Shown here: in pieces, positions 23,008 to 37,372 of the stretch
Numbering within the stretch: position 1 is the stretch's first letter
Layout: each line of letters opens with the position of its first letter
Sequence record: LC494302.1
Reading direction: 5' to 3' (one strand)
DNA length: 64,000 nucleotides
Notes under the pieces: generated by a model
Seen by the model: the letters and a program-made list of their open reading frames with translations, nothing else
What the model was told of the DNA's origin: nothing
Database searches by the model: none
Program-made: the position numbers and the translations under genes

Positions 23008-23016
23008 AAATAATTG

Positions 23017-23057: not shown

Positions 23058-23060
23058 CGC

Positions 23061-23598: not shown

Positions 23599-23686
23599 GT
23601 ATTGACAAAGTATCTTAGTACTGTATAATAGTTTACATCGAGTGAGGGGAAACGGTTCCCCTCCTAACAAAGAGAGAGAAATAAAA

Positions 23687-23869: not shown

Positions 23870-23956
23870 GTATTGACAAAGTATCTTAGTACTGTATAAT
23901 AGTTTACATCAAGTGAGGGGAATGGTTCCCCTCCTAACTAAAAGAGAGAAATAAAA

Positions 23957-24280
23957 ATGGCTATGATCCTTGCCCAGAAAGTAGAATTGAAAATTGTAAC
24001 CTCCTTTGACATTAACGTTAATCGGTGGACTGATTCACACGGCAATACTTACCACTCTTGCTACGTGTCTGCGTTAATTGGCGACCGCTGGGAAGACCTG
24101 GGACACGAAACCTTTACATACGGTTACGGTACACAAGGCGAATACACGGGCTTGGAGATCATTAAAGAAACCGTTATAGGTTTCAACCCGAAAGAAAAAG
24201 TTATTCACCGCATCGAGGAAGAGATCAACAAAGAAATAACAGTTCGCTACCACGATGTAAAACGTAAGAAAGACATGTAA
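23957..24280 (+). CDS. hypothetical early protein (GNTY...YGYG...DVKRKKD family)
   Basis: Paralog of 17074..17418. Confidence 0.85.
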   Translation: MAMILAQKVELKIVTSFDINVNRWTDSHGNTYHSCYVSALIGDRWEDLGHETFTYGYGTQGEYTGLEIIKETVIGFNPKEKVIHRIEEEINKEITVRYHDVKRKKDM

Positions 24281-24366
24281 TAGAATCCATTTAAAGTACT
24301 ATTTGACATTGCCCAGATAGTACTTTATAATAGACTCTAACTTGTAGTACTAACTCAACTAATAGG

Positions 24367-24771
24367 ATGTATACCATGATTACTAAATTCTACGCTACCC
24401 GTGAAGCTGCCCGTATTGTTGCACGCGAGGAAGGCGAAACATTTAAAGACATGGGCAAAGATGCACCGAAAGGTCAACGCTGGGCCGTACAGTTCAAAGA
24501 GATCTCTGATATTGTGAATTCACCGGAGCCAGTACTAACAGCAGCAGAACTAAAACGAGCGGATTTACTGGCGTCAATACTTGATGCACAAGATGAGTTT
24601 ATCGCTGATTCTGATATCAAAGTACAGACAAACCACACCGCTTGGACTCACGCGGATCACCTGGCAAACCTTAAGCGTCCAAGTGAACTGATTCGCAACC
24701 AGAAAGAGATCCGACACGACCGTAAGGGTAATCGTGTAACAGTATACAGTAAACGCCGCCAGGTTATCTAA
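24367..24771 (+). CDS. hypothetical early protein
   Basis: Paralog of 11335..11601 with internal insertion. Confidence 0.8.
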   Translation: MYTMITKFYATREAARIVAREEGETFKDMGKDAPKGQRWAVQFKEISDIVNSPEPVLTAAELKRADLLASILDAQDEFIADSDIKVQTNHTAWTHADHLANLKRPSELIRNQKEIRHDRKGNRVTVYSKRRQVI

Positions 24772-24793
24772 TAACTTGCAGTACTAACAACAC

Positions 24794-24818
24794 GGCGGGA
24801 TCAGTTCCCGCCTTTTTT
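24794..24818 (+). terminator. intrinsic terminator
   Basis: GGCGGGA/TCCCGCC then TTTTTT. Confidence 0.75.
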
Positions 24819-24832
24819 ATAGGACAAACAAA

Positions 24833-25087
24833 ATGATTAAGGTTCAACTATATAAAGATAACATCTTACGGGTACACTATAAAGCACCTCAGAGAATCAT
24901 CACAAAGGCCGTACAGCTTGCAAATGAGTTTATTAATGGTAACCTATTACCTAGGAAGTTAAGCAACGGGAAACTGCGTGTAATCGACGTGGACACTAAC
25001 AACAGGATAGTAATCGAGAACACAGGAAAGATAAACCTTTATGAGCATCAACAATACAATAAGAAAATAAAACTAATATCACGTTGA
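24833..25087 (+). CDS. possible ParE/RelE-like fold protein
   Basis: KAVQL...PRKL.NGKL..IDV...RIV...LYEHQQYN pattern recalled from ParE-like domain proteins; by-eye only. Confidence 0.45.
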   Translation: MIKVQLYKDNILRVHYKAPQRIITKAVQLANEFINGNLLPRKLSNGKLRVIDVDTNNRIVIENTGKINLYEHQQYNKKIKLISR

Positions 25088-25140
25088 CAGTACTCAAATG
25101 TTTTAGTACTATATGTACATACCAACACGGGGGAAACAAA

Positions 25141-25383
25141 ATGATTACTTTAGAAAAACGTATCAAAGAAACTACATCGCTGGTGGAACTGTTAACAGTA
25201 CTCAAATGTAAAACAACACCATTCAGCACGCCGGACTTTATTAATATGGTTGATGTTAATGGTCGCTATCGTATCACGGTCGAACAAGGAGCGGCGAAAG
25301 TATTCAGTACTAAAAACACGAAGGAAGTGATCCACGCCGTTAATGTTAAAAAAGTAGTTGCCATTGATAGTAAAGTACTGTAA
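25141..25383 (+). CDS. hypothetical protein
   Basis: ATG 25141 after GGGGGA. Confidence 0.75.
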   Translation: MITLEKRIKETTSLVELLTVLKCKTTPFSTPDFINMVDVNGRYRITVEQGAAKVFSTKNTKEVIHAVNVKKVVAIDSKVL

Positions 25384-25414
25384 GATAGTTACATTAACTC
25401 AAGGAGAACATGCA

Positions 25415-25999
25415 ATGCGTAATTATACTAAATTCATCCGTACACTGTCAGAAATGGAAACCAACAAAGAGATCCTTTCAGCTTGTCGGTTAGCTGGCCT
25501 GGAGATCATCGGTGCTGGTTCTTCCCGTATAGTTTTCGCTTTAAATGATCGGTTAGTGATTAAGGTCGCGAATTGTGATGCGGGTGTAGAACAAAATGAA
25601 ACTGAATGTAAGGTATGGAATTTTTTAGACTATGACCGCCCTCAGTTGAAACAGTACTTTGCAAAGGTGCATATGCATTTATGCGATCCTGATAATATGT
25701 TTATCGTTATGGATCGGTTGAGTACTGCAAGTAAAGGCAGTGTGAAGCACGTAAACGCGTGCAATGAATTAAAGTACAATATTAAACGTAATGCAATCGA
25801 CCGCCAGCACCGCTTTGCTGATGCACTACAACACGTTGATGATACATTATCAACACTAACGATAAGAGATATCAGAAAACAGAATATCGGCCAGGATCGT
25901 AATGGACTTATTAAAGTACTTGATTACGGTTTAACCAGCAATATCTGGAATCAGTACTATAAAAAGCGTGATGTGGCAGCAAGTAAGGTAACACGATAA
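25415..25999 (+). CDS. protein kinase-like protein
   Basis: GAGSSRIVF Gly loop, VIKVA lysine, EQNETE helix-C Glu, DIRKQNIG catalytic loop, DYG; SD AAGGAG. Confidence 0.8.
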   Translation: MRNYTKFIRTLSEMETNKEILSACRLAGLEIIGAGSSRIVFALNDRLVIKVANCDAGVEQNETECKVWNFLDYDRPQLKQYFAKVHMHLCDPDNMFIVMDRLSTASKGSVKHVNACNELKYNIKRNAIDRQHRFADALQHVDDTLSTLTIRDIRKQNIGQDRNGLIKVLDYGLTSNIWNQYYKKRDVAASKVTR

Positions 26000-26008
26000 A
26001 AAAGATTA

Positions 26009-26049
26009 AAAAAGGGATTGACTCCGGTCAGTCCCTTTGCTATTATATA
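26009..26049 (+). repeat. 41-bp terminator/promoter module (copy 2)
   Basis: Identical to 23017-23057. Confidence 0.9.
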
Positions 26050-26052
26050 TCC

Positions 26053-26097
26053 ATTGAGAGATAACTCACTGACCCATAGGGTGCGGAAGTGTATCTA
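26053..26097 (+). ncRNA. putative small RNA, RCCCANNGGGTGC family
   Basis: GAGAGATAACTC hairpin then ACCCATAGGGTGCGGAAGTGTATC (26072-26095). Confidence 0.5.
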
Positions 26098-26219
26098 TTA
26101 TATAAGTATTCAGTACTGAAAACTATTTTTAAAAAAGTACTTGCATTGTACTTAGAATCAAGTATAATGTTTTATATCGAGAGGGGAAATGGTTCTCCCT
26201 GGCAATAAGGAATAAAATC

Positions 26220-26441
26220 ATGACTACAATGACTTGCATTTACGCTTCCAATCTACTGAATGATGCGGCCTTTAATGTTGATTCAGAATATCAATGTTAT
26301 CGGGATGAAAATAAAAAAGTTTTTGTAGTTGATAATAATGGTTTCCATATTGAATTACAATCCGGCTTCACTGGTGTTGATGGTAAATCAGTATGGGGCG
26401 TACAGGATGATAAAGGCACATATCATTTTAAACGTAATTAA
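26220..26441 (+). CDS. hypothetical early protein
   Basis: SD AAGGA; own cassette. Confidence 0.8.
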   Translation: MTTMTCIYASNLLNDAAFNVDSEYQCYRDENKKVFVVDNNGFHIELQSGFTGVDGKSVWGVQDDKGTYHFKRN

Positions 26442-26525
26442 GTATTGACAAAGTATACCAGTACTGTATAATAGTTTACATCAAGGGGAGAATAGTTCTC
26501 CCCGATACTAAAAGGAAACAAAATT

Positions 26526-26798
26526 ATGTCCAGCTACTCCGCTACTATGATCATTAAAGATATGAACGGTAATCCTACTTCTGCTGGTGGATCATTTGGA
26601 AACATTAATTTAGATGGTCGGTTATCCATGCAATCAGCAATCGATGCAGCGAAAGAAGTTTTTAAGAATGAATGTACTGTTAGTAAGCTGGATTATATGG
26701 GATTTGCTATCGAAAAAACTAATCGTTTTGTGGACTACAAAAAACCACTGATGATTGATACTAACCTGAAAGCAAACGAAGTGGAGTACTTATTATGA
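26526..26798 (+). CDS. hypothetical early protein
   Basis: SD AAGGA; own cassette. Confidence 0.8.
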   Translation: MSSYSATMIIKDMNGNPTSAGGSFGNINLDGRLSMQSAIDAAKEVFKNECTVSKLDYMGFAIEKTNRFVDYKKPLMIDTNLKANEVEYLL

Positions 26799-26986
26799 CA
26801 GTTGAAGAAGTTAAAAAAGTACTGGCAGTACTACGCTATCATAATCATTGTAAGGTGAAGAATGATCCTGATTATCTTGATTCATCCCTGGAAGAGGATA
26901 CACTACAAGCAATAAGCCATATGCAAACATTAGCAAAGCGTATGACCGAAAAGAATAGACCGGACTATATCGGAAATAAAATTTAA
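26795..26986 (+). CDS. hypothetical protein
   Basis: SD GGAG; ATGA overlap. Confidence 0.75.
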   Translation: MTVEEVKKVLAVLRYHNHCKVKNDPDYLDSSLEEDTLQAISHMQTLAKRMTEKNRPDYIGNKI

Positions 26987-27072
26987 AAAGTACTTGCATT
27001 GTAGTTAGATTAACGTATAATGTTTTACATAGAGCGGGGGAATAGTTCTCCCGCCAGTCCAGGAGATACACC

Positions 27073-27336
27073 ATGAACACTATCGAAATCACTATCAATG
27101 CACACGTATACGACAACGTAATCATGCAAACTACTATGACCGCTAATGATACCAGTACTTTGCGGAATACTGTTATTAGTGCCGTATGTGCCGCTATCGG
27201 TGATGTCGCCCTGGAAAATGCAGAACATATCAACAACGGTTTCACTATGTGCAAGCGTGATAACGCAAAACATATCATCGTAGAAGGTTACGGCGGTGTA
27301 GAATTTAATGTTTATATGAAAAAAGTACTTGCATAA
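27073..27336 (+). CDS. hypothetical early protein
   Basis: SD AGGAG; own cassette. Confidence 0.8.
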   Translation: MNTIEITINAHVYDNVIMQTTMTANDTSTLRNTVISAVCAAIGDVALENAEHINNGFTMCKRDNAKHIIVEGYGGVEFNVYMKKVLA

Positions 27337-27403
27337 TAACTAAAACAAAGTATAATGTTTTGCATAGGGGGAGATATCCTCCCCCACTAAAAGGAGTAAT
27401 AAA

Positions 27404-27628
27404 ATGGCTAACTTTGATGAACTGATGCGGGAAGTAGCTAACCTGGCAGAAGAGAAGAAATCATTCGATTCTATCTATAACACCGCTCATCGTGATTCAG
27501 TACTGGCATGTACTCAGGATCAAAAAGATGAACTAATCGCCACCTATCATGAAGCATGGAAGTACTACCGACAATGGGAGAAAGAAGAAAGAGAGTCTAC
27601 CATTGACGGCCTCAACAATCTAATCTAA
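27404..27628 (+). CDS. hypothetical early protein
   Basis: SD AAGGAG; own cassette. Confidence 0.8.
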   Translation: MANFDELMREVANLAEEKKSFDSIYNTAHRDSVLACTQDQKDELIATYHEAWKYYRQWEKEERESTIDGLNNLI

Positions 27629-27704
27629 AAGTTTTATTTCAGTACTATTGACATAGCTTGATAGTACTGATGTAATAACTTTACTAACTACAAGGGGAAA
27701 CATA

Positions 27705-27962
27705 ATGGAACAGTTCACACAATATCGGGTAAATCCTCAAGCTATGGCCTACGTAGAAGACCATAAAACATTACCAGTACTAACACCAATTAAAGGCCAT
27801 ATCTATCGTGCAATGTCATGGAATACCGCCCAGGATGGATATACTACCGCTGGCGTGGGTATGTATTGCGGGAATGGTGAATGGTTTGATCCAAATAATC
27901 CGGTAGCCATTGACAGTACTGAAAAAATGAAATGGGCCGACTACATCGAAGATATTTCATAA
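27705..27962 (+). CDS. hypothetical early protein
   Basis: SD AGGGG. Confidence 0.8.
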   Translation: MEQFTQYRVNPQAMAYVEDHKTLPVLTPIKGHIYRAMSWNTAQDGYTTAGVGMYCGNGEWFDPNNPVAIDSTEKMKWADYIEDIS

Positions 27963-28051
27963 AACTATTTGACAGTACTAACCAGTAATGTATAATGTTT
28001 TACATAGAGCGGGGGAATAGTTCTCCCGCCAATAGTTTGGAGTAAAACATT

Positions 28052-28252
28052 ATGTCTATCGCTATCGCCCTGGTTGAAGTACTGAAAGAAGCTAAAGCCA
28101 ACCAGATCGACGTAAAGATCCAGGAACTACAAAACGGCGTAATCGGCTGTACTTGTACCGCTGGTGGAGCGGCAGACTATCGAGAACACGAATCACTCGA
28201 ATCACTGGTTCGGTATCTTACCATGATCGTTGATGATTGGAGAATCATCTAA
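28052..28252 (+). CDS. hypothetical early protein
   Basis: SD GGAG; own cassette. Confidence 0.8.
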   Translation: MSIAIALVEVLKEAKANQIDVKIQELQNGVIGCTCTAGGAADYREHESLESLVRYLTMIVDDWRII

Positions 28253-28264
28253 CAAAAAAGAATA

Positions 28265-28305
28265 AAAAAGGGATTGACTCCGGTCAGTCCCTTTGCTATT
28301 ATATA
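28265..28305 (+). repeat. 41-bp terminator/promoter module (copy 3)
   Basis: Identical to 23017-23057. Confidence 0.9.
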
Positions 28306-28308
28306 CGC

Positions 28309-28348
28309 ATAGACAAAAACTAGCCCACAGGGTGCATAGGTGTATCTA
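28309..28348 (+). ncRNA. putative small RNA, RCCCANNGGGTGC family
   Basis: GCCCACAGGGTGCATAGGTGTATC (28323-28346). Confidence 0.5.
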
Positions 28349-28496
28349 AAATATATGGTTAATAACGGTGAGTAACTATCTGCTGGTGGAGTGAAAACTA
28401 TTAATAAAAAAGTATTGACAAAGTATATCAGTACTGCGATAATGTATCTCGTAGGGCGGCAATGGTGCGACGGCCCACAAAGTTAGGAGATTCAAA

Positions 28497-28829
28497 ATGA
28501 GTACTTCAATCGCTATCGTTAAAGCTTTCATCCGTACCAATGTTTCATCTGTATTCATCGACGGTATGGATCGGGAAGTAGAATACTCAATCATTATCGC
28601 ACAGACTGCAAACGGTGCTCGGTATATCCTCAATGATAGTGAAGCAAATCACTACTACTTCACTAAAGCTACTGGCTTTAAACGCATCGATGCCGATGTA
28701 GTATACGCTAAGATGAATAAGCTGGTAGACAAGATTAACGCTAAAGGCACTATTGATTTACAGTACTGGACCGAAACCGATCCAGAATATGGATCTCACC
28801 GCTACCTGAATCCAGGTATTAAAATGTAA
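28497..28829 (+). CDS. hypothetical early protein
   Basis: SD AGGAG. Confidence 0.8.
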   Translation: MSTSIAIVKAFIRTNVSSVFIDGMDREVEYSIIIAQTANGARYILNDSEANHYYFTKATGFKRIDADVVYAKMNKLVDKINAKGTIDLQYWTETDPEYGSHRYLNPGIKM

Positions 28830-28918
28830 AAAGTACTTGCATAGTACTTAGATTCATGTATAATGTTTTACATAGAGAGGGGGAAATGGTTCTCCCTCCT
28901 AAATTAAGGAGTTTTATC

Positions 28919-29320
28919 ATGACCTTCTCAATCACTTCCTTCGCTGACGTTTTAGTACTGGCTCGGACTTTTGGTAAAGATGCACTGGAGTACGCTGTAA
29001 GTAATGGCACTATCCAACCGGAACAGTGCCGCATCATTGGAAACTGCAAACGTTGGGCGGTATCCAATACTATTGCACTGGAAAACTTCCACGATGGCAA
29101 CAATGAATATTCTGTTGATGTAGTATTCGAAGCCGTTGATCTCGGCGGTATCTATAATACTAACCTGAATGATGTGCGTATCGTTCGCACGGGGTTCGGT
29201 GCTTATGATGTATCTATCCGTGAAGCTATGAACACCGGATACATTAGCAAGGACTTACTTGCTCACATCATGCAGCTGTGTACGGAACGTAACGAAGCAC
29301 GTACTATCTTAGGGCTGTAA
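28919..29320 (+). CDS. hypothetical early protein
   Basis: ATG 28919 after AAGGAG; own cassette. Confidence 0.8.
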   Translation: MTFSITSFADVLVLARTFGKDALEYAVSNGTIQPEQCRIIGNCKRWAVSNTIALENFHDGNNEYSVDVVFEAVDLGGIYNTNLNDVRIVRTGFGAYDVSIREAMNTGYISKDLLAHIMQLCTERNEARTILGL

Positions 29321-29344
29321 GCAATACACATCACCAAACATCAT

Positions 29345-29364
29345 AGGCCGCTCTCTAGCGGCCT
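29345..29364. terminator. GC-rich hairpin, possible terminator
   Basis: AGGCCGCT/AGCGGCCT; short T tail only. Confidence 0.45.
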
Positions 29365-29388
29365 TAACTATATCAGGAGTACATACAC

Positions 29389-29598
29389 ATGATCTATACA
29401 GTATACAGCGTCCTAGGCACTATTGCAGGCGTACATGATAACGTCGATAGTGCTATGCGTACAGTACTGCAACAGGTTCCACTAAAGCCTAAGACCATTA
29501 AGCAGATGACAGCACGACTAACCAGGGCGACCGATGGCGTGGAAGTATGGCAGGACTACGGGGATACACAGATAATCGTTAGCGTAACGAAGGATTAA
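29389..29598 (+). CDS. hypothetical protein
   Basis: SD AGGAG. Confidence 0.75.
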   Translation: MIYTVYSVLGTIAGVHDNVDSAMRTVLQQVPLKPKTIKQMTARLTRATDGVEVWQDYGDTQIIVSVTKD

Positions 29599-29626
29599 TG
29601 CGTAAAGGGATCTAGTACTGATTCAG

Positions 29627-29706
29627 AAAAAAGTCAAGGCGTTTTTAAAATTATGCGTTAAAAAAATGCATAGGTAATCCCTTGACTTTTTTGAAATAAA
29701 AGGGAT
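29627..29706. repeat. inverted repeats at boundary of early island
   Basis: AAAAAAGTCAAGG (29627-29639)/CCTTGACTTTTTT (29680-29692); AATCCCTT/AAGGGATT (29676-29706). Confidence 0.7.
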
Positions 29707-29847
29707 TGGACTATGGCAAAATGCGTAGGGGGCTAAAGGGCGGGTAACCTTAGCGACTTCGATAAAGGGGTATTACGAATAAAATGTTATTGATTTTTTA
29801 TACGAATCGTATATTATAGGATTGATATTATTTTTAATGGAGTCCCT

Positions 29848-30045
29848 ATGCGTATTTTAACTAAAGAACAGCACCACGAAAGACTTATCAATAACATGGC
29901 TATGATAATGTATAAGTCCCATGACCGTGGTATTGCCTATAAGCGTGAATTAATTATGGCACTATTCATTGGAACTAACTTTCAGGAAAGGTATGTCAAC
30001 GATTGGATTTGGTATTTAATTGAAGATATAACGAGTAAACTATGA
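29848..30045 (+). CDS. family B small protein
   Basis: IGTNFQE motif; SD GGAG. Confidence 0.85.
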   Translation: MRILTKEQHHERLINNMAMIMYKSHDRGIAYKRELIMALFIGTNFQERYVNDWIWYLIEDITSKL

Positions 30046-30242
30046 AAATGCGTATTTTAAATAAAGAAGAATATCAATCACTGTTACGTAAAAACTTCAC
30101 AAAGATTTATAATACAGACACACACGTAGAACGAATGGAGTTATACCTTTTGATTACTTTGGGAACTAACTATCAGGAAAGATGGGTGATTCAATATATG
30201 GATACATTGAAAAATAAAATATTGTCCACGAGGAAACAATGA
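30042..30242 (+). CDS. family B small protein
   Basis: LGTNYQE. Confidence 0.85.
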   Translation: MKMRILNKEEYQSLLRKNFTKIYNTDTHVERMELYLLITLGTNYQERWVIQYMDTLKNKILSTRKQ

Positions 30243-30448
30243 AAACTATAACACGAACCCAATCATACGGTCTTATCTTGAAATACATGGACTTAATGGT
30301 GGATATCAGCAAAGACCTTCCTAAAACTGAAATTGAAGTTGCAAGAGCAGAGATCCGCATGTTGGCTGTACTGAACACAAACCATCAGGAAGATTATGTT
30401 GAAGAATGGATTCGATTTTTAATTCAAGATATAAAGAGTAAATTATGA
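30239..30448 (+). CDS. family B small protein
   Basis: LNTNHQE. Confidence 0.85.
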   Translation: MKTITRTQSYGLILKYMDLMVDISKDLPKTEIEVARAEIRMLAVLNTNHQEDYVEEWIRFLIQDIKSKL

Positions 30449-30657
30449 TTTTTTTAACACCAGAAGAATATAAGAAACGTTTCAATTCCGCACAGGGTGA
30501 AATCTTACTTATATACCTTTCAAATGCAGACCTTAACTTATCAAGGGTATTAGAAAAAGATTTACTTATGGGTGCATTCCTTGATACAGACTTTCAGGTG
30601 TATTATGTAGGGGAATACTTAATTGCACTCCAGAATTACATTAAGAGTAAACTATGA
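30445..30657 (+). CDS. family B small protein
   Basis: LDTDFQV. Confidence 0.85.
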   Translation: MIFLTPEEYKKRFNSAQGEILLIYLSNADLNLSRVLEKDLLMGAFLDTDFQVYYVGEYLIALQNYIKSKL

Positions 30658-30866
30658 ATAGCATTAACTCAAATCTATATACCGAACGCGTCGCGGCCAG
30701 ACAACTTGAAATTCTCATAGTATATGAAGAGACTGATGATTTAAACTTAGCATTAGTATTGGAAAATGATATACTATTGGGTGCATTCCTCGGCACAGAC
30801 TATCAGGAGCACTTCTTGAATGAGTATATAATTGCACTCCAGAAATACATTAAGAGCAAACTATGA
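30654..30866 (+). CDS. family B small protein
   Basis: LGTDYQE; close duplicate of previous gene. Confidence 0.85.
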   Translation: MNSINSNLYTERVAARQLEILIVYEETDDLNLALVLENDILLGAFLGTDYQEHFLNEYIIALQKYIKSKL

Positions 30867-31081
30867 AACATTTAAGTAATTACGAGAAGAATAAAATTAT
30901 CGTTGCTGCAATAAACAAATATTTTACACTTCCTCACACAGAAGGTTTATGTGTAAGGGAACACAGGATAAACACCACCGATATACGCATGATGGCTGTA
31001 CTGGGGACGAACTTTCAGGAAGAGTATGTTGTTGCACACATAGTTGCCCTCACTGATCTAATAAGGGACAAATGTAAATGA
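30863..31081 (+). CDS. family B small protein
   Basis: LGTNFQE. Confidence 0.85.
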   Translation: MKHLSNYEKNKIIVAAINKYFTLPHTEGLCVREHRINTTDIRMMAVLGTNFQEEYVVAHIVALTDLIRDKCK

Positions 31082-31335
31082 AACACTTAACTGATGATGA
31101 ATTTGAAACTATAATTCGTAAACTAACCCCCATCACAAGGATAGTCTACGGTGACCCCAGCCTTACATGGAACCAAATGCGAGCTAAAGTTAATGAGCTA
31201 TGGTTGCTGTACTTTATGGGGACTCAATATCAAGATAAGTTTTGCACAGAATATATCGAACAATTAACGAATGTTATACAGGATAAACTAGATGATTATT
31301 TGCTCACAAAACATGAAGACTTTATCAGGAGTTGA
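31078..31335 (+). CDS. family B small protein
   Basis: MGTQYQD. Confidence 0.85.
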   Translation: MKHLTDDEFETIIRKLTPITRIVYGDPSLTWNQMRAKVNELWLLYFMGTQYQDKFCTEYIEQLTNVIQDKLDDYLLTKHEDFIRS

Positions 31336-31564
31336 GTATCAAACTGCCCTATTCTCTTTAATCCATGCCCTTAGAAAAAACAATGCCTTATATGGTGCAC
31401 CTGAAGTGGATGTTATCAACGGTGAACTTTATCTTATGAAATTCATTGGAACAAACTATCAAGATCTGTTCATTCAACGATACTTATCAGCATTAAGAAA
31501 CCAAATCCAATATAAAACCATCAAGGCCAAAAAAGAATGGAATAAACAATGCGACACAGACTAA
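31313..31564 (+). CDS. family B small protein
   Basis: IGTNYQD; start MKTLS at 31313. Confidence 0.8.
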   Translation: MKTLSGVEYQTALFSLIHALRKNNALYGAPEVDVINGELYLMKFIGTNYQDLFIQRYLSALRNQIQYKTIKAKKEWNKQCDTD

Positions 31565-31797
31565 ATCACAAAATGTATTGTAAACTATTGCAGACATTGG
31601 CACAGAAACACTATGACACGGTATCTGGAATATTACCCTATGATATCATGCGTTTACTTCACTGTGAGGCCGAGATGCTTGTACTGATGACAGGCACTGA
31701 TAAAAACGCAATTGCCAAATCAATAGATATGTTCATCGAAGCACACTGCCAACACATGAGAACCGAAATCTGGAGGAAAGAGAATGATAATCCTTAA
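31549..31797 (+). CDS. family B small protein (divergent)
   Basis: EAEMLVLMTGTDKNA. Confidence 0.75.
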   Translation: MRHRLNHKMYCKLLQTLAQKHYDTVSGILPYDIMRLLHCEAEMLVLMTGTDKNAIAKSIDMFIEAHCQHMRTEIWRKENDNP

Positions 31798-31999
31798 TGA
31801 GTATCAGTATCATTGGAGGTTACAAACTATCAAATCAAAAGTGTATAGTATTGTGTTAAACAAATCTATTGCACAAGAGGACAAATGTGTTATAATAGCT
31901 GAAATGAAGTTGGGTGTATTCGTAGGGACAAACTATCAAAACATCTACACTGACGTATTGTTAAGTGCCTTACGTAACAAGGTGGTATCCAAAATATGA
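31784..31999 (+). CDS. family B small protein
   Basis: VGTNYQN. Confidence 0.85.
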   Translation: MIILNEYQYHWRLQTIKSKVYSIVLNKSIAQEDKCVIIAEMKLGVFVGTNYQNIYTDVLLSALRNKVVSKI

Positions 32000-32214
32000 G
32001 AAATTTACAAGGCTTTGAATACATCAGACTCCTGAAAACATGTGGAAGCAGAAGGAGAATGATATCAAGCGATAAGAGCATCCAAGCTAACCTTAAGCAC
32101 GCACTAGTAACTGAACTCTATGTAGGTGCACTCTTAGGCACAAACTATCAACAAATGTATGTAGATCTATGGATTGACGCTCTACAGAAAGAGGTTAAAA
32201 GTAAATGCAAATGA
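31996..32214 (+). CDS. family B small protein
   Basis: LGTNYQQ. Confidence 0.85.
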   Translation: MRNLQGFEYIRLLKTCGSRRRMISSDKSIQANLKHALVTELYVGALLGTNYQQMYVDLWIDALQKEVKSKCK

Positions 32215-32423
32215 TTAATTTAAGTAAAGACGAATTTTATGTTATACTGGCGAAAACTTATCCAGCACGTAAGGCCGTTTATGATAGTCACATTATTGAA
32301 CCCTCAAAGAAGTTGATTTTAGTAAATGAGATAAAGATGCTTTCAGTCTTAGGAACAAACTATCAAGAGAATGCTGTACTGATGTTAATTGATGCCCTCC
32401 AGAGAGAGGTTAAACGTAAATGA
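32205..32423 (+). CDS. family B small protein
   Basis: LGTNYQE. Confidence 0.85.
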   Translation: MQMINLSKDEFYVILAKTYPARKAVYDSHIIEPSKKLILVNEIKMLSVLGTNYQENAVLMLIDALQREVKRK

Positions 32424-32650
32424 AAATGATTAATTTAACTTACCATGAATATCAAAAACGTTTAAATGCATCCAGAGATATAAGGATTCAAATATTCAAT
32501 AACAAAAAATTGAAACCTGATACCAGAAGAATCAAAATCATAGAAGCCGTGTTGTGTAACTTCCTAGGGACTAACTATCAGGAAGGTAAGGTAGAAAACT
32601 ATCTTATAGAACTCATGAATAGTATTGAAAATAAATGTAAGGGTAATTAA
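32420..32650 (+). CDS. family B small protein
   Basis: LGTNYQE. Confidence 0.85.
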   Translation: MKMINLTYHEYQKRLNASRDIRIQIFNNKKLKPDTRRIKIIEAVLCNFLGTNYQEGKVENYLIELMNSIENKCKGN

Positions 32651-32651
32651 C

Positions 32652-32891
32652 ATGAAAATGATTAAATTATCTCAAGCAAAATATAAAGAACGCCTGGTAA
32701 AAATTGCACCTGGACTTAATGAAATCCATCACGGAGAAGTCATTAAACACGGAAATAAGATGATTATGAAACTTGAGTTAAAGGTGGGTGCATTCATAGG
32801 AACAAACTATCAGGAGTATTATGTAGATGAATACATAATCGCACTTAAGAGATACATTGGAAGAAAACTATATCTACAAACTAAAGAATAG
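32652..32891 (+). CDS. family B small protein
   Basis: IGTNYQE; ATG 32652. Confidence 0.85.
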   Translation: MKMIKLSQAKYKERLVKIAPGLNEIHHGEVIKHGNKMIMKLELKVGAFIGTNYQEYYVDEYIIALKRYIGRKLYLQTKE

Positions 32892-32920
32892 TATTGAAAA
32901 TAAATGTAAGGGTAATTAAC

Positions 32921-33184
32921 ATGCAAATGATCAATTTAAGTAAAGATGAATATACCGAGCGTATGACAAAAATTACGCACAAACGTAATACAATCTATCA
33001 CAACCCAGAAATTCAACACAGTAAGAAAATGATTATGATGCGTGAGTTAAAGATGGGTGTATTCTTAGGAACAAACTATCAAGATACAGAAGTAAATCGC
33101 TTAATCGCGGAGTTACTACTGGAAATCAGAGGTAAGCTGTACTTTCATCAAATGACCCAACCACTGAGGTGTACTGATCGATGA
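32921..33184 (+). CDS. family B small protein
   Basis: LGTNYQD; ATG 32921. Confidence 0.85.
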   Translation: MQMINLSKDEYTERMTKITHKRNTIYHNPEIQHSKKMIMMRELKMGVFLGTNYQDTEVNRLIAELLLEIRGKLYFHQMTQPLRCTDR

Positions 33185-33432
33185 ATGCGATGAATATTGT
33201 GAATAACATCAGATTAGCAGAAAGATTTGATAGAATTGGGGAAGCACTGAGAAGATACGATAAAGAATATGGTCATTTGAGCTTTTCTATAGAAAAGAGA
33301 TATGAACTTGAAGCAGAGTTTAAAATGCAGAGTCTCTTAGGCACACAGTATCAAAACCAATATATTCAAACTTGGATTGATTGTTTAATCCAGACAATTT
33401 ACGTAAGAAACATTAAATGCAAAATGAAATGA
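33181..33432 (+). CDS. family B small protein
   Basis: LGTQYQN. Confidence 0.85.
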   Translation: MNAMNIVNNIRLAERFDRIGEALRRYDKEYGHLSFSIEKRYELEAEFKMQSLLGTQYQNQYIQTWIDCLIQTIYVRNIKCKMK

Positions 33433-33671
33433 TATACTTAACACATGATGAGTTAACAGAAAGACTAGATAAATCCAAAAGACTTACAAATAAACTTCCT
33501 CACAACACAAATCAAACCCCAGCAGAAAGGAGTGCAGAAGTTTTATTCCAAAGATTACCATACCTTCTTGGAACTGATAGGCAAGAGTATCACATTGAAC
33601 GTATAATTAAATATCTCAAAATTACTATTAAGGAAAAAGTAAATGCAAATGAAATACTTAACAGACGATGA
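33429..33671 (+). CDS. family B small protein
   Basis: LGTDRQE. Confidence 0.85.
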   Translation: MIYLTHDELTERLDKSKRLTNKLPHNTNQTPAERSAEVLFQRLPYLLGTDRQEYHIERIIKYLKITIKEKVNANEILNRR

Positions 33672-33894
33672 GTTAAAAGAACGACTAATTAAATCCAGAA
33701 AACTTACAAATCAACTTCCAAACGACACAAACAAGTCACATGCCGAAAGGAGTGCAGAAGTTTTATACATTCAACTCATGTACTTTCTTGGCACTGACAG
33801 ACAAGAGTATTACATTGAAAGTATGCTTCGATATCTTAAATTCTCTATAAAGGAAAAGATACATGCTCAAGAATTTAAAAATCCTAACAGTTAA
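33643..33894 (+). CDS. family B small protein
   Basis: LGTDRQE; close duplicate of previous gene. Confidence 0.85.
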   Translation: MQMKYLTDDELKERLIKSRKLTNQLPNDTNKSHAERSAEVLYIQLMYFLGTDRQEYYIESMLRYLKFSIKEKIHAQEFKNPNS

Positions 33895-34105
33895 TGAATA
33901 TCATACGATTGTAATGAAAACTAATAGTGCAATTTCTAAAAAATCAAACCCCAAGTACATACTGGAACACACATTTGAAGAACGTCAATTAGCTTTAGTT
34001 GAAGCAAAACTTCTTGCACTCCTAGGGACTAACTATCAAGAAGAATACATCAGAAAACTAATATACCTTTTAACTAAACATATAAGAAAAAGAAAAAATG
34101 CATGA
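33863..34105 (+). CDS. family B small protein
   Basis: LGTNYQE. Confidence 0.85.
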   Translation: MLKNLKILTVNEYHTIVMKTNSAISKKSNPKYILEHTFEERQLALVEAKLLALLGTNYQEEYIRKLIYLLTKHIRKRKNA

Positions 34106-34332
34106 AACACTTGACAGATGATGAACATGGGCTTATAGTAATGGATGTAATCAACATCGAATACAAAAAGTTGATACGCTACCGTTGTTATGAAGATAAG
34201 CAACTCGTTCTAGCAGAACAGAAGTTGTTTCGACTCTTAAACACAAACTTCCAAGCACAATACGAAGAATCGTATATGTACCTTTTGGCGAGGAAAGCAA
34301 AAAGAGATTATGAAAATTTTAAGCAAAGGTGA
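34102..34332 (+). CDS. family B small protein
   Basis: LNTNFQA. Confidence 0.85.
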   Translation: MKHLTDDEHGLIVMDVINIEYKKLIRYRCYEDKQLVLAEQKLFRLLNTNFQAQYEESYMYLLARKAKRDYENFKQR

Positions 34333-34525
34333 TTCAGTAATATTACTTATAGAGAGTTCAAGTAAATTCTTAAACATAACACTGTCTGATATAGATGAAG
34401 ATGACAAAGAAGTACTGAGAGCAGATTTAAGAGTACTGTTACATATCGGAACAAACCTACAAGAAGAATATGTAGAATGCTACATCAATGAACTTAAAGA
34501 ATCAGTACTGAGAAAATGCAAATGA
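34310..34525 (+). CDS. family B small protein
   Basis: IGTNLQE. Confidence 0.85.
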   Translation: MKILSKGDSVILLIESSSKFLNITLSDIDEDDKEVLRADLRVLLHIGTNLQEEYVECYINELKESVLRKCK

Positions 34526-34743
34526 AAATCATTACCGATGCAGAATACCTAACAATCATAAATGGACTGTTTTTGAAGCTCTTCGTCATTAACACATCAG
34601 ATATACCAGATATGGATAAAATTATTAAGAGAAATGAAGTCTATGTTCTAGCTACCCTTGGAACGAACTATCAAGAACACGACATTAAAGATTATATTAA
34701 TACACTTAAACGAGCGATTGAACTAAAATGCCAAAACCACTAG
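34516..34743 (+). CDS. family B small protein
   Basis: LGTNYQE. Confidence 0.85.
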   Translation: MQMKIITDAEYLTIINGLFLKLFVINTSDIPDMDKIIKRNEVYVLATLGTNYQEHDIKDYINTLKRAIELKCQNH

Positions 34744-34943
34744 GAACAGCAGAATACATTGAACTAATGGCATTACACTTCTCATCCTTTCAGAAACTTA
34801 GGCGAGAATCAAAGAATGATTTAGAATATACCATCAGAGGTTCCGATTTAAGAATGCTTCTCACCCTAGACACAGATTCCCAAGAGCGATTTGTCAATGA
34901 GCATATTAGAGCACTTTTAATGGAAATTCAAAGTAAACTATGA
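34728..34943 (+). CDS. family B small protein
   Basis: LDTDSQE. Confidence 0.85.
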   Translation: MPKPLGTAEYIELMALHFSSFQKLRRESKNDLEYTIRGSDLRMLLTLDTDSQERFVNEHIRALLMEIQSKL

Positions 34944-35155
34944 AGATAATATCAAACCAAGAGTACTTGGCACTATTCAGGAAGAATAATCACAAATATA
35001 TGGCACTTGATTCAAGAACTGATATAAGTGAACTTGAAAAAAATCTTTTGCGTTCAGAGATGATAGTACTGACACTCTTAGGAACACAGCATCAAGAGAG
35101 AACTGTTAATTCACACATAGGTATTCTTATACAGATTGTACTGGAAAAGATATGA
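34940..35155 (+). CDS. family B small protein
   Basis: LGTQHQE. Confidence 0.85.
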   Translation: MKIISNQEYLALFRKNNHKYMALDSRTDISELEKNLLRSEMIVLTLLGTQHQERTVNSHIGILIQIVLEKI

Positions 35156-35373
35156 GAATCATAACACAACAAGATATTCTTAAGTTCACAAGGGTTCATG
35201 CATCTGAATTTGATGCTATATTATCAAAAAGTTACAACAACCCTTATACAGAAGATGTACATTACAGTGAATTATGGATGTATATACTTTTAGGTACAAA
35301 TAAACAAGAGCAAGCAGTACAGAAGTATTTGACAGCTTTACGTGATGCTACTGCTAATGGAGTATGTGTTTAA
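35152..35373 (+). CDS. family B small protein
   Basis: LGTNKQE. Confidence 0.85.
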   Translation: MRIITQQDILKFTRVHASEFDAILSKSYNNPYTEDVHYSELWMYILLGTNKQEQAVQKYLTALRDATANGVCV

Positions 35374-35374
35374 T

Positions 35375-35617
35375 ATGAAAGTACTGACAGAACTAGAAAT
35401 GTATCATAGATTTAATAAGTACTATCATTTACTTAAGCCTATACAGAGGATTAAATGTCCATTTGAAGAGAAACAGGTTTTAATCTATGAGCACAAGTTC
35501 TTTGTATCATTAGGTACAGATCAACAAGAGTACTATTTGACGTTGTACTTGATTACATTAATAGATTTAATTCACTATAAAACAAAACAAGCTAATAAAG
35601 AGAAATATGAAAACTAA
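35375..35617 (+). CDS. family B small protein
   Basis: LGTDQQE; ATG 35375. Confidence 0.85.
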   Translation: MKVLTELEMYHRFNKYYHLLKPIQRIKCPFEEKQVLIYEHKFFVSLGTDQQEYYLTLYLITLIDLIHYKTKQANKEKYEN

Positions 35618-36626: not shown

Positions 36627-36943
36627 AATTTAATATAGCAAAAACATCGAGTATATGTATTTTTGGTTATGCAGAAGAGTTAGGTGATATTGACATTCTT
36701 TTGTACAAAAAGGATGGTGTTATGCATTTCAAGTACCAGGATGAAGAGGCAGACAATTATCTTTTACCTAATTTAGTACAAATGCAGGAAGAGGAATTAT
36801 TCCAGTACAGCTTAATATACGACATTGTTATTTGCACGATGCCAGTACTAATTAGTATTCAAAAAGTGATGCTCGATATGTATGATAAGCTAATACAAGG
36901 TACATCAGGGAGAATCATTGAAATCGATATACAAGACAATTAA
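36623..36943 (+). CDS. family C protein (short type)
   Basis: EEELFQYSLIYD; SD GAGGTG. Confidence 0.85.
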   Translation: MKFNIAKTSSICIFGYAEELGDIDILLYKKDGVMHFKYQDEEADNYLLPNLVQMQEEELFQYSLIYDIVICTMPVLISIQKVMLDMYDKLIQGTSGRIIEIDIQDN

Positions 36944-37136
36944 TCAAGAATGGAAGACCCAAAAGTACAGGGAATTCAACAGGAATTTTACAAAAGATGC
37001 ATTGAATTTAAAAACAACAGAGTTTGATATGTTTATTTTTCTTGGAACACGTTCACAAGAACAATTTGTTCATTATTATATAAATTCGTTGCGAACGGAG
37101 ATAGTATGCAAAACACAGGGTATTATAAAAAGGTAA
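36918..37136 (+). CDS. family B small protein (dispersed copy)
   Basis: LGTRSQE; TTG start. Confidence 0.7.
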   Translation: MKSIYKTINQEWKTQKYREFNRNFTKDALNLKTTEFDMFIFLGTRSQEQFVHYYINSLRTEIVCKTQGIIKR

Positions 37137-37372
37137 ACCAATATTTGTACGCTACAAAGTACAGGGATTTTTGTTTAAAGGGTGGTGATGAAGATTTTTC
37201 TTTGCGATTATCAGAATTTAATCTGTTATTTTATCTTGGTACAAAAGAACAAGAAGAAATGGCACAGAAATTTATCAAGCACCTTTTACAAAAAATTAAT
37301 ATGCAAATTTTGATGCTTAAGTTACAGAATGAGATAAATGAATATGAATCCAGAAATAGTTCAGGATCTTAA
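37106..37372 (+). CDS. family B small protein (dispersed copy)
   Basis: LGTKEQE; SD GGAG. Confidence 0.8.
   Translation: MQNTGYYKKVNQYLYATKYRDFCLKGGDEDFSLRLSEFNLLFYLGTKEQEEMAQKFIKHLLQKINMQILMLKLQNEINEYESRNSSGS

What the first reader, a model, noticed from the sequence alone, without database searches (positions are those of the whole stretch)
29848..35617. Tandem array of 26 small paralogs with an LGTNYQE motif (family B)
Seen: 26 consecutive ~65-90 aa ORFs, mostly coupled by ATGA or short overlaps. The pattern is M(K/R)x(L/I)(T/S)xxEY...E(L/M)xxxxx(L/I)GT(N/D/Q)(Y/F)Q(E/D)xx(V/I)xx(Y/W)IxxLxxxIxxK, with a variable N-terminal helix. Four more copies are dispersed (36918, 37106, 49549, 49748). 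Recent duplicate pairs: 30445/30654 and 33429/33643. Inference: a gene accordion of small helical proteins with a fixed motif and variable surface, plausibly a set of anti-defence or host-protein binders, or hetero-oligomerising subunits expressed stoichiometrically via translational coupling.
Basis: partly seen in the sequence, partly recalled or inferred. Interest (0 to 1): 0.7.

Follow-up and report, generated by a model that had tools for sequence, protein, structure and literature searches.

The report
Jumbo-phage array of small helical paralogs
A giant E. coli phage (SP27, genus Asteriusvirus) carries one tightly packed operon of 26 old, diverged copies of a tiny three-helix protein just inside its long terminal repeat. 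This looks like a standing panel of small binding proteins used during infection, but its function has not been tested.

Summary
Window 29848-35617 holds 26 consecutive + strand genes of one family, and four more copies lie at 36918, 37106, 49549 and 49748. A family profile separates these 30 ORFs (E 1e-17 to 1e-25) from all other ORFs (E >= 0.75).

The window is Escherichia phage SP27. The array starts 98 bp inside the inner edge of the ~20.9-kb direct terminal repeat (DTR). It has its own conserved sigma-70-like promoter and overlapping, coupled genes.

AlphaFold models two members with pLDDT 96-97 as three-helix bundles. The N-terminal strand is clasped to the near-invariant G-T-x-x-Q turn. 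Conservation follows one face of each helix.

The family matches no Pfam, NCBIfam, PADLOC or PDB entry. It matches only PHROG 4148, which has no known function. It occurs only in Asteriusvirus-like phages, plus a few dispersed copies in RaK2.

Copy number is 20-29 in 15 relatives. The paralogs are old: the closest pair is 61% identical with dS 0.62. Each is kept as an ortholog under purifying selection (dN/dS about 0.33). It is therefore a stable multigene family evolving by gain, loss and cassette exchange, not a gene accordion.

Most likely role (inferred): non-virion, pre-late host-takeover or counter-defence binders.

The parts
8822..29750 (+). Context: inferred copy of the ~20.9-kb direct terminal repeat (DTR). 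It is collapsed to one copy in the circularised SP27 record.
   Evidence: Base 1 of fEgEco12, whose termini were confirmed by restriction digests (PMC13070987), aligns to window 8822 at 96% identity. Its last base aligns to window 29750. The vB_Ec-M-J record annotates a DTR at 1..21525, and its array starts at 21624.
29622..29695 (+). Terminator-like stem-loop followed by a U run, at the end of the DTR gene block
   Evidence: RNA fold MFE -23.6 kcal/mol, z -4.95, 0 of 200 shuffles as good.
29790..29817 (+). Sigma-70-like promoter of the array operon, in the 98-bp unique spacer
   Evidence: TTGATT-16-TATTAT, 9 of 12. The spacer has 91% mean column identity in 9 phages, and 7 of the 9 have TTGACT as the -35 hexamer. 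A GGAG Shine-Dalgarno site precedes the first ATG.
29848..35617 (+). Tandem array of 26 family members, one translationally coupled operon
   Evidence: No intergenic gap above 35 nt. Shine-Dalgarno duplex energy is -4.3 kcal/mol at the starts and -1.9 at random positions.
29848..30045 (+). member 1 (65 aa)
   Evidence: profile E 6.6e-20; AlphaFold pLDDT 97.3
30042..30242 (+). member 2 (66 aa; profile-guided start 30048)
   Evidence: E 3.5e-20
30239..30448 (+). member 3 (69 aa)
   Evidence: E 2e-22
30445..30657 (+). member 4 (70 aa)
   Evidence: E 3.6e-21
30654..30866 (+). member 5 (70 aa)
   Evidence: E 9.1e-20
30863..31081 (+). member 6 (72 aa)
   Evidence: E 7.8e-24
31078..31335 (+). member 7 (85 aa)
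   Evidence: E 8.5e-26
31292..31564 (+). member 8 (90 aa; profile-guided start 31313)
   Evidence: E 1.7e-20
31549..31797 (+). member 9 (82 aa). It is atypical: it has an insertion after the G-T turn and N in place of Q.
   Evidence: E 1.6e-18; alignment
31784..31999 (+). member 10 (71 aa)
   Evidence: E 2.8e-23
31996..32214 (+). member 11 (72 aa)
   Evidence: E 5.2e-25
32205..32423 (+). member 12 (72 aa; profile-guided start 32211)
   Evidence: E 3.8e-23
32420..32650 (+). member 13 (76 aa; profile-guided start 32426)
   Evidence: E 5.4e-25
32625..32891 (+). member 14 (longest ORF 88 aa from TTG; the record starts it at 32652; profile-guided start 32658)
   Evidence: E 2e-25; 100% identical in 18 phage records; AlphaFold pLDDT 95.9
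32894..33184 (+). member 15 (longest ORF 96 aa from TTG; the record starts it at 32921; profile-guided start 32927)
   Evidence: E 3.8e-25
33181..33432 (+). member 16 (83 aa; profile-guided start 33190)
   Evidence: E 3.4e-18
33417..33671 (+). member 17 (84 aa; profile-guided start 33429)
   Evidence: E 1.8e-22
33643..33894 (+). member 18 (83 aa; profile-guided start 33649)
   Evidence: E 2.2e-23
33863..34105 (+). member 19 (80 aa)
   Evidence: E 3.6e-21
34102..34332 (+). member 20 (76 aa)
   Evidence: E 1.3e-18
34310..34525 (+). member 21 (71 aa)
   Evidence: E 3.2e-21
34516..34743 (+). member 22 (75 aa; profile-guided start 34522)
   Evidence: E 2.7e-24
34728..34943 (+). member 23 (71 aa)
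   Evidence: E 6e-20
34940..35155 (+). member 24 (71 aa)
   Evidence: E 1.8e-21
35152..35373 (+). member 25 (73 aa)
   Evidence: E 3.7e-21
35342..35617 (+). member 26 (longest ORF 91 aa from GTG; profile-guided start 35375)
   Evidence: E 1.7e-22
36918..37136 (+). dispersed member (72 aa)
   Evidence: E 5.1e-10 with a profile built from the 26 array members only
37106..37372 (+). dispersed member (88 aa)
   Evidence: E 3.3e-5 with the 26-only profile
49549..49770 (+). dispersed member (73 aa)
   Evidence: E 2.4e-5 with the 26-only profile
49748..49939 (+). dispersed member (63 aa)
   Evidence: E 3e-11 with the 26-only profile

Best explanation
SHOWN. This is a lineage-specific multigene family of Asteriusvirus jumbo phages.
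- In SP27 it has 26 tandem and 4 dispersed genes for soluble proteins of about 65-85 aa.
- Each protein is predicted with high confidence to be a three-helix bundle. The N-terminal strand is clasped to the helix-2/helix-3 turn, which carries the near-invariant G-T-x-x-Q.
- One face of each helix is conserved (the core). The other faces, the helix-1/helix-2 loop and the net charge differ from paralog to paralog.
- The 26 tandem genes form one operon. It begins 98 bp inside the unique DNA next to the left terminal repeat, behind a terminator-like hairpin and a conserved sigma-70-like promoter. Translation is coupled by ATGA or short overlaps, so all members are made together.
- The paralogs are old and positionally conserved across the genus. 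Each is under moderate purifying selection. Single slots are lost, gained or swapped for deeply diverged alleles between close relatives.

INFERRED.
- Host RNA polymerase transcribes the operon before the late phase.
- The products stay in the infected cell.
- They act as a standing panel of non-enzymatic binding modules. Each uses its own surface to bind, and so block or redirect, a different host protein or defence component. This would be host takeover or counter-defence.
- The G-T-x-x-Q pole mainly serves folding.
For: Anatomy.

Position:
- The DTR edge is at window 29750 and the first gene starts at 29848 (PMC13070987).
- The DTR upstream holds 23 near-consensus sigma-70 promoters. All are on the + strand, and none lies outside the DTR (94 promoter-like sites against 66.8 +/- 8 expected).
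- The DTR also carries genes typical of takeover regions: a DksA/TraR zinc finger, a GNAT acetyltransferase, a ParE-like domain and a weak kinase match.
- The hairpin at 29622-29695 has z -4.95.
- The array's own promoter region is 91% conserved in 9 phages.

Fold:
- pLDDT 97.3 with pTM 0.79, and pLDDT 95.9 with pTM 0.82. Both models have the same topology.
- Column entropy peaks at 95-105 degrees along all three helices.
- pI ranges from 4.4 to 9.9. No member is strongly hydrophobic (GRAVY at most 0.17).

The genes are real and functional:
- Ortholog dN/dS is 0.30-0.42 against 14 phages. The per-group median is 0.33 and no group exceeds 1.
- This is faster than the DTR neighbours (0.13-0.20) and similar to the accessory families downstream (0.32-0.45).

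Members are individually dispensable or exchangeable:
- 20-29 copies per array in 15 phages.
- 22 ortholog groups occur in at least 11 of 15 phages, and 29 are singletons.
- Slot alleles are 42-64% identical, next to neighbouring genes whose orthologs stay within one group (>=75% identity).

Not structural: none of gp467c-gp489c is among the 62 virion proteins of phAPEC6 (PMC7247149).

No enzyme or housekeeping match was found.
Against: - No expression, interaction or phenotype data exist for any member, so timing and targets are inferred from position alone.
- The array lacks the strong promoter class of the DTR. It may therefore be delayed-early or middle rather than immediate-early.
- Which genome end enters the cell first is unknown for this genus.
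- Most paralogs are stably conserved with no gene-wide positive selection. That is less than expected for a front-line arms-race locus and fits a conserved internal role equally well.
- Small proteins are easily missed by virion mass spectrometry.
- The near-invariance of T and Q (97% and 99%) is stronger than simple helix capping needs, so the pole could be a shared functional site.
Confidence: 0.45

Rival explanations
1. The paralogs are subunits of one hetero-oligomeric, non-virion assembly such as a lattice, filament or scaffold. Translational coupling would supply them in fixed proportions, and conserved gene order would reflect assembly order.
For: - Tight coupling and co-expression.
- Conserved order and long-lived orthologs under purifying selection.
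- A shared conserved pole that could be a common contact.
Against: - Copy number varies from 20 to 29, and single members are absent or replaced by alleles only 42-64% identical in close relatives.
- pI ranges from 4.4 to 9.9.
- The monomer models are compact and confident on their own.
- Four copies are dispersed in other operons.
Confidence: 0.15
2. The proteins bind nucleic acid or RNA polymerase and act as a family of small transcription or replication regulators. The helix-2/turn/helix-3 unit would act like a helix-turn-helix, and each paralog would recognise its own site.
For: - The fold is a three-helix bundle with a conserved G at the turn.
- More than half of the members are basic.
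- There is a published precedent: about 35 copies of a zinc ribbon in Bacillus phage G, proposed to be specific transcription factors or DNA-binding proteins (PMC7824862).
Against: - No helix-turn-helix family appears in Pfam or NCBIfam.
- Foldseek finds no significant match to any DNA-binding fold (best E 3.4 and 1.8).
- Helix 3 has 19-25 residues, and its conserved face follows the core periodicity rather than a recognition face.
- Ten of 30 members have pI of 6.1 or lower.
Confidence: 0.1
3. The locus is an active gene accordion, with recent tandem amplification and collapse under current selection, as in poxvirus K3L.
For: Copy number differs between isolates. The period is regular at about 210-270 bp, and a conserved motif-coding stretch could support unequal crossing-over.
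Against: - The closest paralogs are 51-61% identical with dS 0.62-1.02.
- DNA repeats are at most 80% identical.
- Orthologs are far closer to each other than paralogs are, and they keep their positions.
Confidence: 0.03
4. The ORFs are functionless duplicates or annotation noise in AT-rich DNA.
For: No function or homolog is known. The ORFs are very short.
Against: - All 26 are intact and match the profile over its full length.
- dN/dS is about 0.33.
- Shine-Dalgarno sites are present.
- The models are very confident.
- The reading frames are kept in 15 phages and in metagenomic relatives.
Confidence: 0.02

Closest known systems
PHROG 4148 (with PHROG 28039), phage protein families of unknown function
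   Same: 29 of 30 members match PHROG 4148 (best E 9.3e-27). 13 also match PHROG 28039. The RaK2 relative and the 269-aa UB protein match PHROG 4148 as well.
   Different: The catalogue entry carries no function, structure or description of the array, its position or its evolution.
Lineage-specific expansion of a small zinc ribbon (~35 copies) in Bacillus phage G (Iyer et al. 2021, PMC7824862)
   Same: A jumbo phage with tens of paralogs of one very small protein whose function is unknown and only guessed.
   Different: The fold is different: there is no zinc ligand pattern (0-3 Cys per member). The host and phage group differ. Here the copies are tandem, coupled, and placed next to the terminal repeat.
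Host-takeover gene blocks in or beside long terminal repeats (SPO1 gp37-60 module, T5 pre-early genes). This comparison rests on my own knowledge, not on a tool result.
   Same: Many small genes at a repeat-bearing genome end, all in one orientation, served by host-type promoters. The products are non-structural.
   Different: Those blocks consist of unrelated genes, not one paralog family. Here the strong promoters lie in the repeat itself, while the array sits just outside it with a weaker promoter. Early timing is not shown here.
Terminal multigene families of large eukaryotic DNA viruses (poxvirus Bcl-2-like family, ASFV MGF360/505). Own knowledge, conceptual analogy only.
   Same: Old, highly diverged paralogs with one small helical fold, clustered near a genome end. 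Members vary between strains. In those viruses each member binds a different host factor.
   Different: There is no sequence or fold relationship. The host is bacterial. No target is known here.
Poxvirus K3L-type gene accordion (own knowledge)
   Same: Tandem copies whose number varies between genomes.
   Different: Accordion copies are near-identical and recent. These are 28% identical at the median and predate the genus.
Polyimmunity loci of polymorphic toxin systems (Zhang et al. 2012, PMC3482391). The paper surfaced but was not read; the comparison rests on my own knowledge.
   Same: Tandem arrays of small, diverse, non-enzymatic proteins, each thought to neutralise a different effector.
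   Different: No member matches a Pfam family, which would include any immunity family held there. The locus is in a virulent phage. No toxin partner lies next to it.

Membership tests
PHROG 4148 | Significant match to the family profile over most of its length | tested here: met
   29 of 30 members match at E <= 0.01 (best 9.3e-27). Member 1 covers profile positions 1-71 of 74.
Gene accordion (recent tandem amplification) | Near-identical copies; synonymous divergence close to zero | tested here: not met
   The closest pairs are 61%, 52% and 51% identical in amino acids, with dS 0.62, 0.88 and 1.02. DNA repeats are at most 80% identical.
Gene accordion (recent tandem amplification) | Copy number differs between closely related genomes | tested here: met
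   20-29 copies per array in 15 phages. The differences arise by loss, gain or replacement of diverged single cassettes.
Helix-turn-helix DNA-binding proteins | Match to an HTH sequence family or fold | tested here: not met
   No HTH family in Pfam or NCBIfam. Foldseek against the PDB gives best E 3.4 and 1.8, with no significant DNA-binding match.
Known anti-phage defence proteins (PADLOC) | Match to a defence-system model | tested here: not met
   Only scattered single-member matches at E >= 0.0015.
Known anti-defence proteins (e.g. Ocr, ArdA, anti-CRISPRs, Tad/Gad families) | Sequence or fold relationship to a solved member | tested here: not met
   Profile searches of the PDB give E >= 0.56. 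Foldseek finds nothing significant in the PDB, and in BFVD only Asteriusvirus paralogs. No dedicated anti-defence library was available.
Known anti-defence proteins | Inhibits a defence system | not testable with these tools
   No functional data are available.
Early / host-takeover gene block | Lies at the genome end served by host-type promoters, with small non-structural products | tested here: met
   It is the first operon after the DTR. The sigma-70-like promoter is conserved. None of the products is in the phAPEC6 virion proteome.
Early / host-takeover gene block | Transcribed early in infection | not testable with these tools
   No transcriptome of an Asteriusvirus was found.
Virion structural proteins | Detected in purified particles | tested here: not met
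   Table 1 of PMC7247149 lists 62 virion proteins. None is gp467c-gp489c, the phAPEC6 array. Caveat: small proteins are hard to detect.

The most novel reading that the evidence does not exclude
The family may be a library of adaptors. The near-invariant pole is formed by the N-terminal strand with its conserved hydrophobic residue, T/S, E and Y, together with the G-T-x-x-Q turn. It would dock every member onto one common hub, such as a host protease, chaperone or polymerase, or a phage machine. The paralog-specific helix faces and loop would each recruit a different client. One operon would thus retarget a single host machine to about 26 different substrates. This would be a bacterial-virus counterpart of the F-box/ankyrin or BTB adaptor families of large eukaryotic viruses.
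Probability: 0.12. Interest if true: 0.85.

Novelty: new member of a known kind. Interest (0 to 1): 0.5.

Why it matters
About 80% of jumbo-phage genes have no assigned function (83% in phAPEC6, PMC7247149), and this locus alone accounts for some 30 of them in every Asteriusvirus genome. The analysis shows one ancient, conserved, co-expressed family with a confidently predicted mini-fold and diversified surfaces, located at the boundary of the terminal repeat. That turns 26 'hypothetical proteins' into a single tractable question. It also gives a natural series of more than 69 sequence-diverse variants of one 70-residue scaffold. If the members prove to bind different host or defence proteins, the array would be among the largest single-family effector panels known in a phage. 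It would parallel the terminal multigene families of poxviruses and ASFV. It also corrects the accordion reading: variation here comes from old cassettes being lost, gained and exchanged, not from recent amplification.

Tried and rejected
- Pfam, NCBIfam and PADLOC scans of all 30 members gave only scattered chance-level hits.
- Profile searches of PDB sequences with 30-member and 73-member alignments gave nothing below E 0.56.
- Foldseek with two models against the PDB gave best E 3.4 (the Sbi-IV three-helix bundle) and 1.8. These are generic helical overlaps and were rejected as homology. Against BFVD, only Asteriusvirus paralogs matched.
- Profile-profile comparison with two neighbouring paralog families (the 35607-type family and the 5027-type family) showed no relationship, with probability 0.1-0.2%.
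- The 269-aa protein of phage UB, which starts with a family domain, was followed up as a possible functional fusion. Its C-terminal 200 residues have no Pfam, PHROG or PDB match and no homolog among 5.8 billion proteins. This was a dead end.
- Rfam found no RNA family anywhere in the window. There are no tRNAs.
Neither was pursued.
- One dN/dS script timed out and was rewritten.
- Literature searches found no paper that describes this array.
- Dimer or multimer prediction and mapping of conservation onto coordinates could not be done.
- Per-column residue shares were printed, but no majority sequence was written out.

Full report
**Identity of the window.** Region 29848-35617 is 100% identical to Escherichia phage SP27 (LC494302.1, 347 kb, genus Asteriusvirus), record positions 153848-159617. 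It matches 35 other jumbo phages of Escherichia and Salmonella at 83-96% identity with variable coverage. In SP27 and its relatives every gene under the match is annotated 'hypothetical protein'.

**Check of the observation.**
- Twenty-six consecutive + strand ORFs of 65-96 aa fill 29848-35617.
- A profile of the 30 proposed members, searched against all six-frame ORFs of the 64-kb window, returns exactly those 30 (E 1.7e-17 to 8.5e-26). Nothing else scores better than E 0.75.
- A profile made from the 26 array genes alone finds the four dispersed copies at E 5e-10, 3e-5, 2e-5 and 3e-11.
- Median pairwise identity is 28%.
Among the 30 members, G is present in 26, T in 29, Q in 29 and a later L in 29. 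Across 69 ortholog groups from 15 phages the shares are 93%, 97%, 99% and 90%.
- Twelve of 25 junctions are ATGA overlaps. With profile-guided start codons no gap exceeds 35 nt. Shine-Dalgarno pairing upstream of the starts averages -4.3 kcal/mol, against -1.9 at random positions in the array.
- The minus-strand ORFs in the region are short, overlap the family genes and match nothing. There is no Rfam family or tRNA in the window.

**Where the array sits.**
- fEgEco12 has a 20,993-bp direct terminal repeat (DTR) confirmed by restriction digests (PMC13070987). Its first base aligns to window 8822 and its last base to window 29750.
- The vB_Ec-M-J record annotates its DTR as 1..21525, and its array starts at 21624.
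- SP27's window therefore contains one collapsed DTR copy (8822-29750). The array's first ATG lies 98 bp inside the unique DNA.
- The DTR is unusual in its own right. It has 23 near-consensus sigma-70 promoters, TTG(A/C)(C/A)A-N16/17-TATAAT. All are on the + strand between 9186 and 27969, and none occurs anywhere else in the 64 kb. The tool's scan finds 94 promoter-like sites against 66.8 +/- 8.0 expected.
- The DTR also encodes a DksA/TraR zinc finger, a GNAT acetyltransferase, a ParE-like domain and a weak kinase match.
- The DTR gene block ends in a stable hairpin followed by a U run (29622-29695; -23.6 kcal/mol, z -4.95).
- The 98-bp unique spacer carries a sigma-70-like promoter, 9 of 12 in SP27. 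The -35 hexamer is TTGACT in 7 of 9 phages, and the spacer is 91% conserved.
- The array region shows no promoter enrichment (44 sites against 45.7 expected).
- The next uncovered gap is at 36322-36380 and holds another promoter-like site.
- I infer one ~6.5-kb operon, 29848-36321, read by host polymerase. It lacks the strong DTR promoter class, so immediate-early timing is not assured.

**The protein.**
- AlphaFold2 on member 1 (65 aa, 30-sequence alignment) gives pLDDT 97.3 and pTM 0.79. Helices span 6-27, 29-39 and 46-64, and a beta bridge joins residue 2 to residue 43, the T of the G-T turn.
- Member 14 (79 aa, 73-sequence alignment) gives pLDDT 95.9 and pTM 0.82 with the same topology.
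- From the models and the column statistics I infer the following. G is the C-cap of helix 2. T pairs with the N-terminal strand. The N/D/Q and E/D positions form the cap of helix 3. The conserved N-terminal segment and the turn therefore make up one pole of the bundle.
- Column entropy has alpha-helical periodicity in all three helices (peaks at 95-105 degrees; 5.8-fold over the mean in helix 3). One face is conserved and the others vary.
- Positions that vary between paralogs also vary within ortholog groups (Spearman 0.62).
- pI ranges from 4.4 to 9.9, and no member is strongly hydrophobic (GRAVY at most 0.17).

**No known relatives.**
- Pfam, NCBIfam and PADLOC give only chance-level scatter.
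- PDB profile searches give E >= 0.56.
- Foldseek against the PDB gives best E 3.4 and 1.8. Against BFVD it finds only Asteriusvirus paralogs.
- The family is catalogued as PHROG 4148, with PHROG 28039, of unknown function.

**Distribution.**
- A profile search of 1.84 billion representative proteins finds only 101 clusters (33 at E <= 1e-10). All are 52-121 aa except one of 269 aa.
- Of the 101, 42 are at least 50% identical to the arrays fetched here.
- The other 59 come from the divergent phage JNE01, from metagenomic contigs and, weakly, from RaK2/K64-1-type Klebsiella phages.
- tblastn finds the family in 36 of 50,697 phage records, all from Escherichia or Salmonella.
- RaK2 has four dispersed weak copies and no array.
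- A 169-kb metagenomic relative has 29 tandem and 3 dispersed copies. A more distant 101-kb contig has 12 tandem and 5 dispersed copies.
- The domain therefore predates the genus, and the large array is a lineage-specific expansion.

**Evolution.**
- Arrays were delimited by the same flanking genes in 15 phages. Copy numbers are: SP27 26, fEgEco12 28, UB 27, WPEC3 29, vB_Ec-M-J 26, phAPEC6 28, Turkey3 28, Sharanji 29, PBECO4 29, 121Q 23, Salmonella phage SD-15 27, BF17 28, ph0011 27, A4 20. JNE01 has 20, but its downstream flank was not found, so that total includes a few dispersed copies.
- The unverified CMSTMSU record gives 32 hits, of which 18 are partial. I read this as sequence errors and excluded it.
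- Gene order is collinear. Differences are single cassettes that are present or absent, plus slots occupied by deeply diverged alleles. For example, slot 1 alleles are 55% identical with dS 0.79, and slot 16 alleles are 42% identical. The neighbouring genes (groups 2 and 3) are much less diverged, with mean dN 0.05-0.06 and dS 0.08-0.09.
- Of 69 ortholog groups, 22 occur in at least 11 of 15 phages and 29 are singletons, mostly from JNE01 and A4.
- Ortholog dN/dS is 0.30-0.42 against 14 phages. The per-group median is 0.33, the maximum 0.92, and none exceeds 1.
- Small DTR genes just upstream give 0.13-0.20. Paralog families downstream give 0.32-0.45.
- The closest paralog pairs within SP27 have dS 0.62-1.02. 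The best DNA repeat is 80% identical over 132 nt.
- The array is old and maintained. It is not a recent amplification.

**Interpretation.**
- Shown: a co-transcribed, translationally coupled set of 26 diverged three-helix mini-proteins at the DTR boundary. Each is conserved, each has its own surface, and single members are expendable or exchangeable.
- Also shown: the phAPEC6 orthologs are absent from the 62-protein virion proteome.
- Inferred: the products are made before the late phase and work in the cell as a panel of binding modules against different host or defence proteins.
- A fixed hetero-oligomer fits the coupling and the conserved order, but not the slot losses and replacements or the dispersed copies.
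- A DNA-binding family is not supported by any sequence or fold match.
- The near-invariance of T and Q leaves room for a shared docking site, which is the adaptor reading.
- No paper in the library describes the array. The nearest published parallel is the ~35-copy zinc-ribbon expansion of phage G (PMC7824862).
- The parallels to the SPO1 and T5 terminal takeover genes, and to the poxvirus and ASFV terminal multigene families, rest on my own knowledge.

**Verdict.** This is a new, undescribed member of a known kind, namely the lineage-specific multigene families of large DNA viruses. Interest is moderate because function remains open.

Noticed in passing
window 9186-27969 (within the inferred DTR 8822-29750): There are 23 near-consensus sigma-70 promoters, TTG(A/C)(C/A)A-N16/17-TATAAT. 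All are on the + strand, roughly one per small gene, and share an extended consensus (an A-rich upstream stretch and a conserved leader running to a GGGGAG-type ribosome site). None occurs elsewhere in the 64 kb or on the - strand.
   Followed up: partly
window 8822 and 29750: The physical genome ends of the relative fEgEco12 map to these two positions. The SP27 record is therefore a circularised assembly with the ~20.9-kb terminal repeat collapsed to one copy. Window 8549-9830 has no ORF of 60 aa or more on either strand and contains the left end.
   Followed up: yes
window 20990-21247, 21311-21667, 24833-25087, 25358-25999: Several DTR genes have recognisable domains: a DksA/TraR C4 zinc finger (E 1.6e-10), a GNAT acetyltransferase (E 4e-9), a ParE-like toxin domain (E 6e-11), and a weak protein-kinase match below Pfam's cut-off that two relatives annotate as a kinase.
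   Followed up: partly
window 23019-23046, 26011-26038, 28267-28294 (variant at 18984-19011): An identical 28-nt perfect hairpin is repeated three times in the DTR. Each copy overlaps a TTGACT-17-TATTAT promoter-like site with a TG extension. It could be an operator or a terminator-promoter unit.
   Followed up: no
window 35607-36943, 44326-45523, 51088-51775, 53327-53689: A second paralog family of 8-9 members (111-161 aa) has an invariant F-Q in a conserved acidic motif and matches PHROG 13866, of unknown function. It is unrelated to the array family by profile comparison.
   Followed up: partly
window 45533-47845, 52852-53337, 54074-54568; also 48156-49041 and 52379-52855: There are further paralog families of 147-164 aa (7 members) and 148-158 aa (3 members). 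The ~28 kb downstream of the array is largely built from multigene families arranged in 3-8-kb operons. The few gaps (36322, 40280, 44235, 52320, 56166, 59465) carry promoter-like or terminator-like sites.
   Followed up: no
window 5027-6171 and 6771-7966: Two more tandem families of ~60-80-aa ORFs (6 and 4 members) lie just before the left edge of the DTR copy. In the linear genome that places them at the far end of the unique region. They are unrelated to the array family.
   Followed up: partly
window 476-4064, - strand: Three tandem paralogs of 376-400 aa are the only long minus-strand genes in the window. GC skew changes sign near 8000.
   Followed up: no
L014 7549-7914 (BF17), L010 5980-6345 (PBECO4), L017 5979-6797 (A4): Some relatives carry an extra ORF (121 aa in BF17 and PBECO4, 272 aa in A4) inserted between the last DTR gene and the first array gene. 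The junction is therefore a site of insertion.
   Followed up: no
L004 11368-12177 (phage UB; protein P0086): A 269-aa protein, also seen on 13 contigs, begins with a family domain (residues 10-63) and continues into about 200 residues with no detectable relative anywhere.
   Followed up: yes
L013 (CMSTMSU, UNVERIFIED record), L004 (UB), L010 (PBECO4): In CMSTMSU, 18 of 32 family hits are partial, and the gene calls are sparse and short. In UB and PBECO4 many intact family ORFs are simply not annotated. I attribute the first to record quality and the second to annotation, not to biology.
   Followed up: partly
window 32652-32888 (member 14): This member is 100% identical at the protein level in 18 phage records. 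In most of the others the best match is only a 35-71% identical paralog (two records have 96-99% orthologs). This is a sharp presence/absence pattern for a single cassette.
   Followed up: partly
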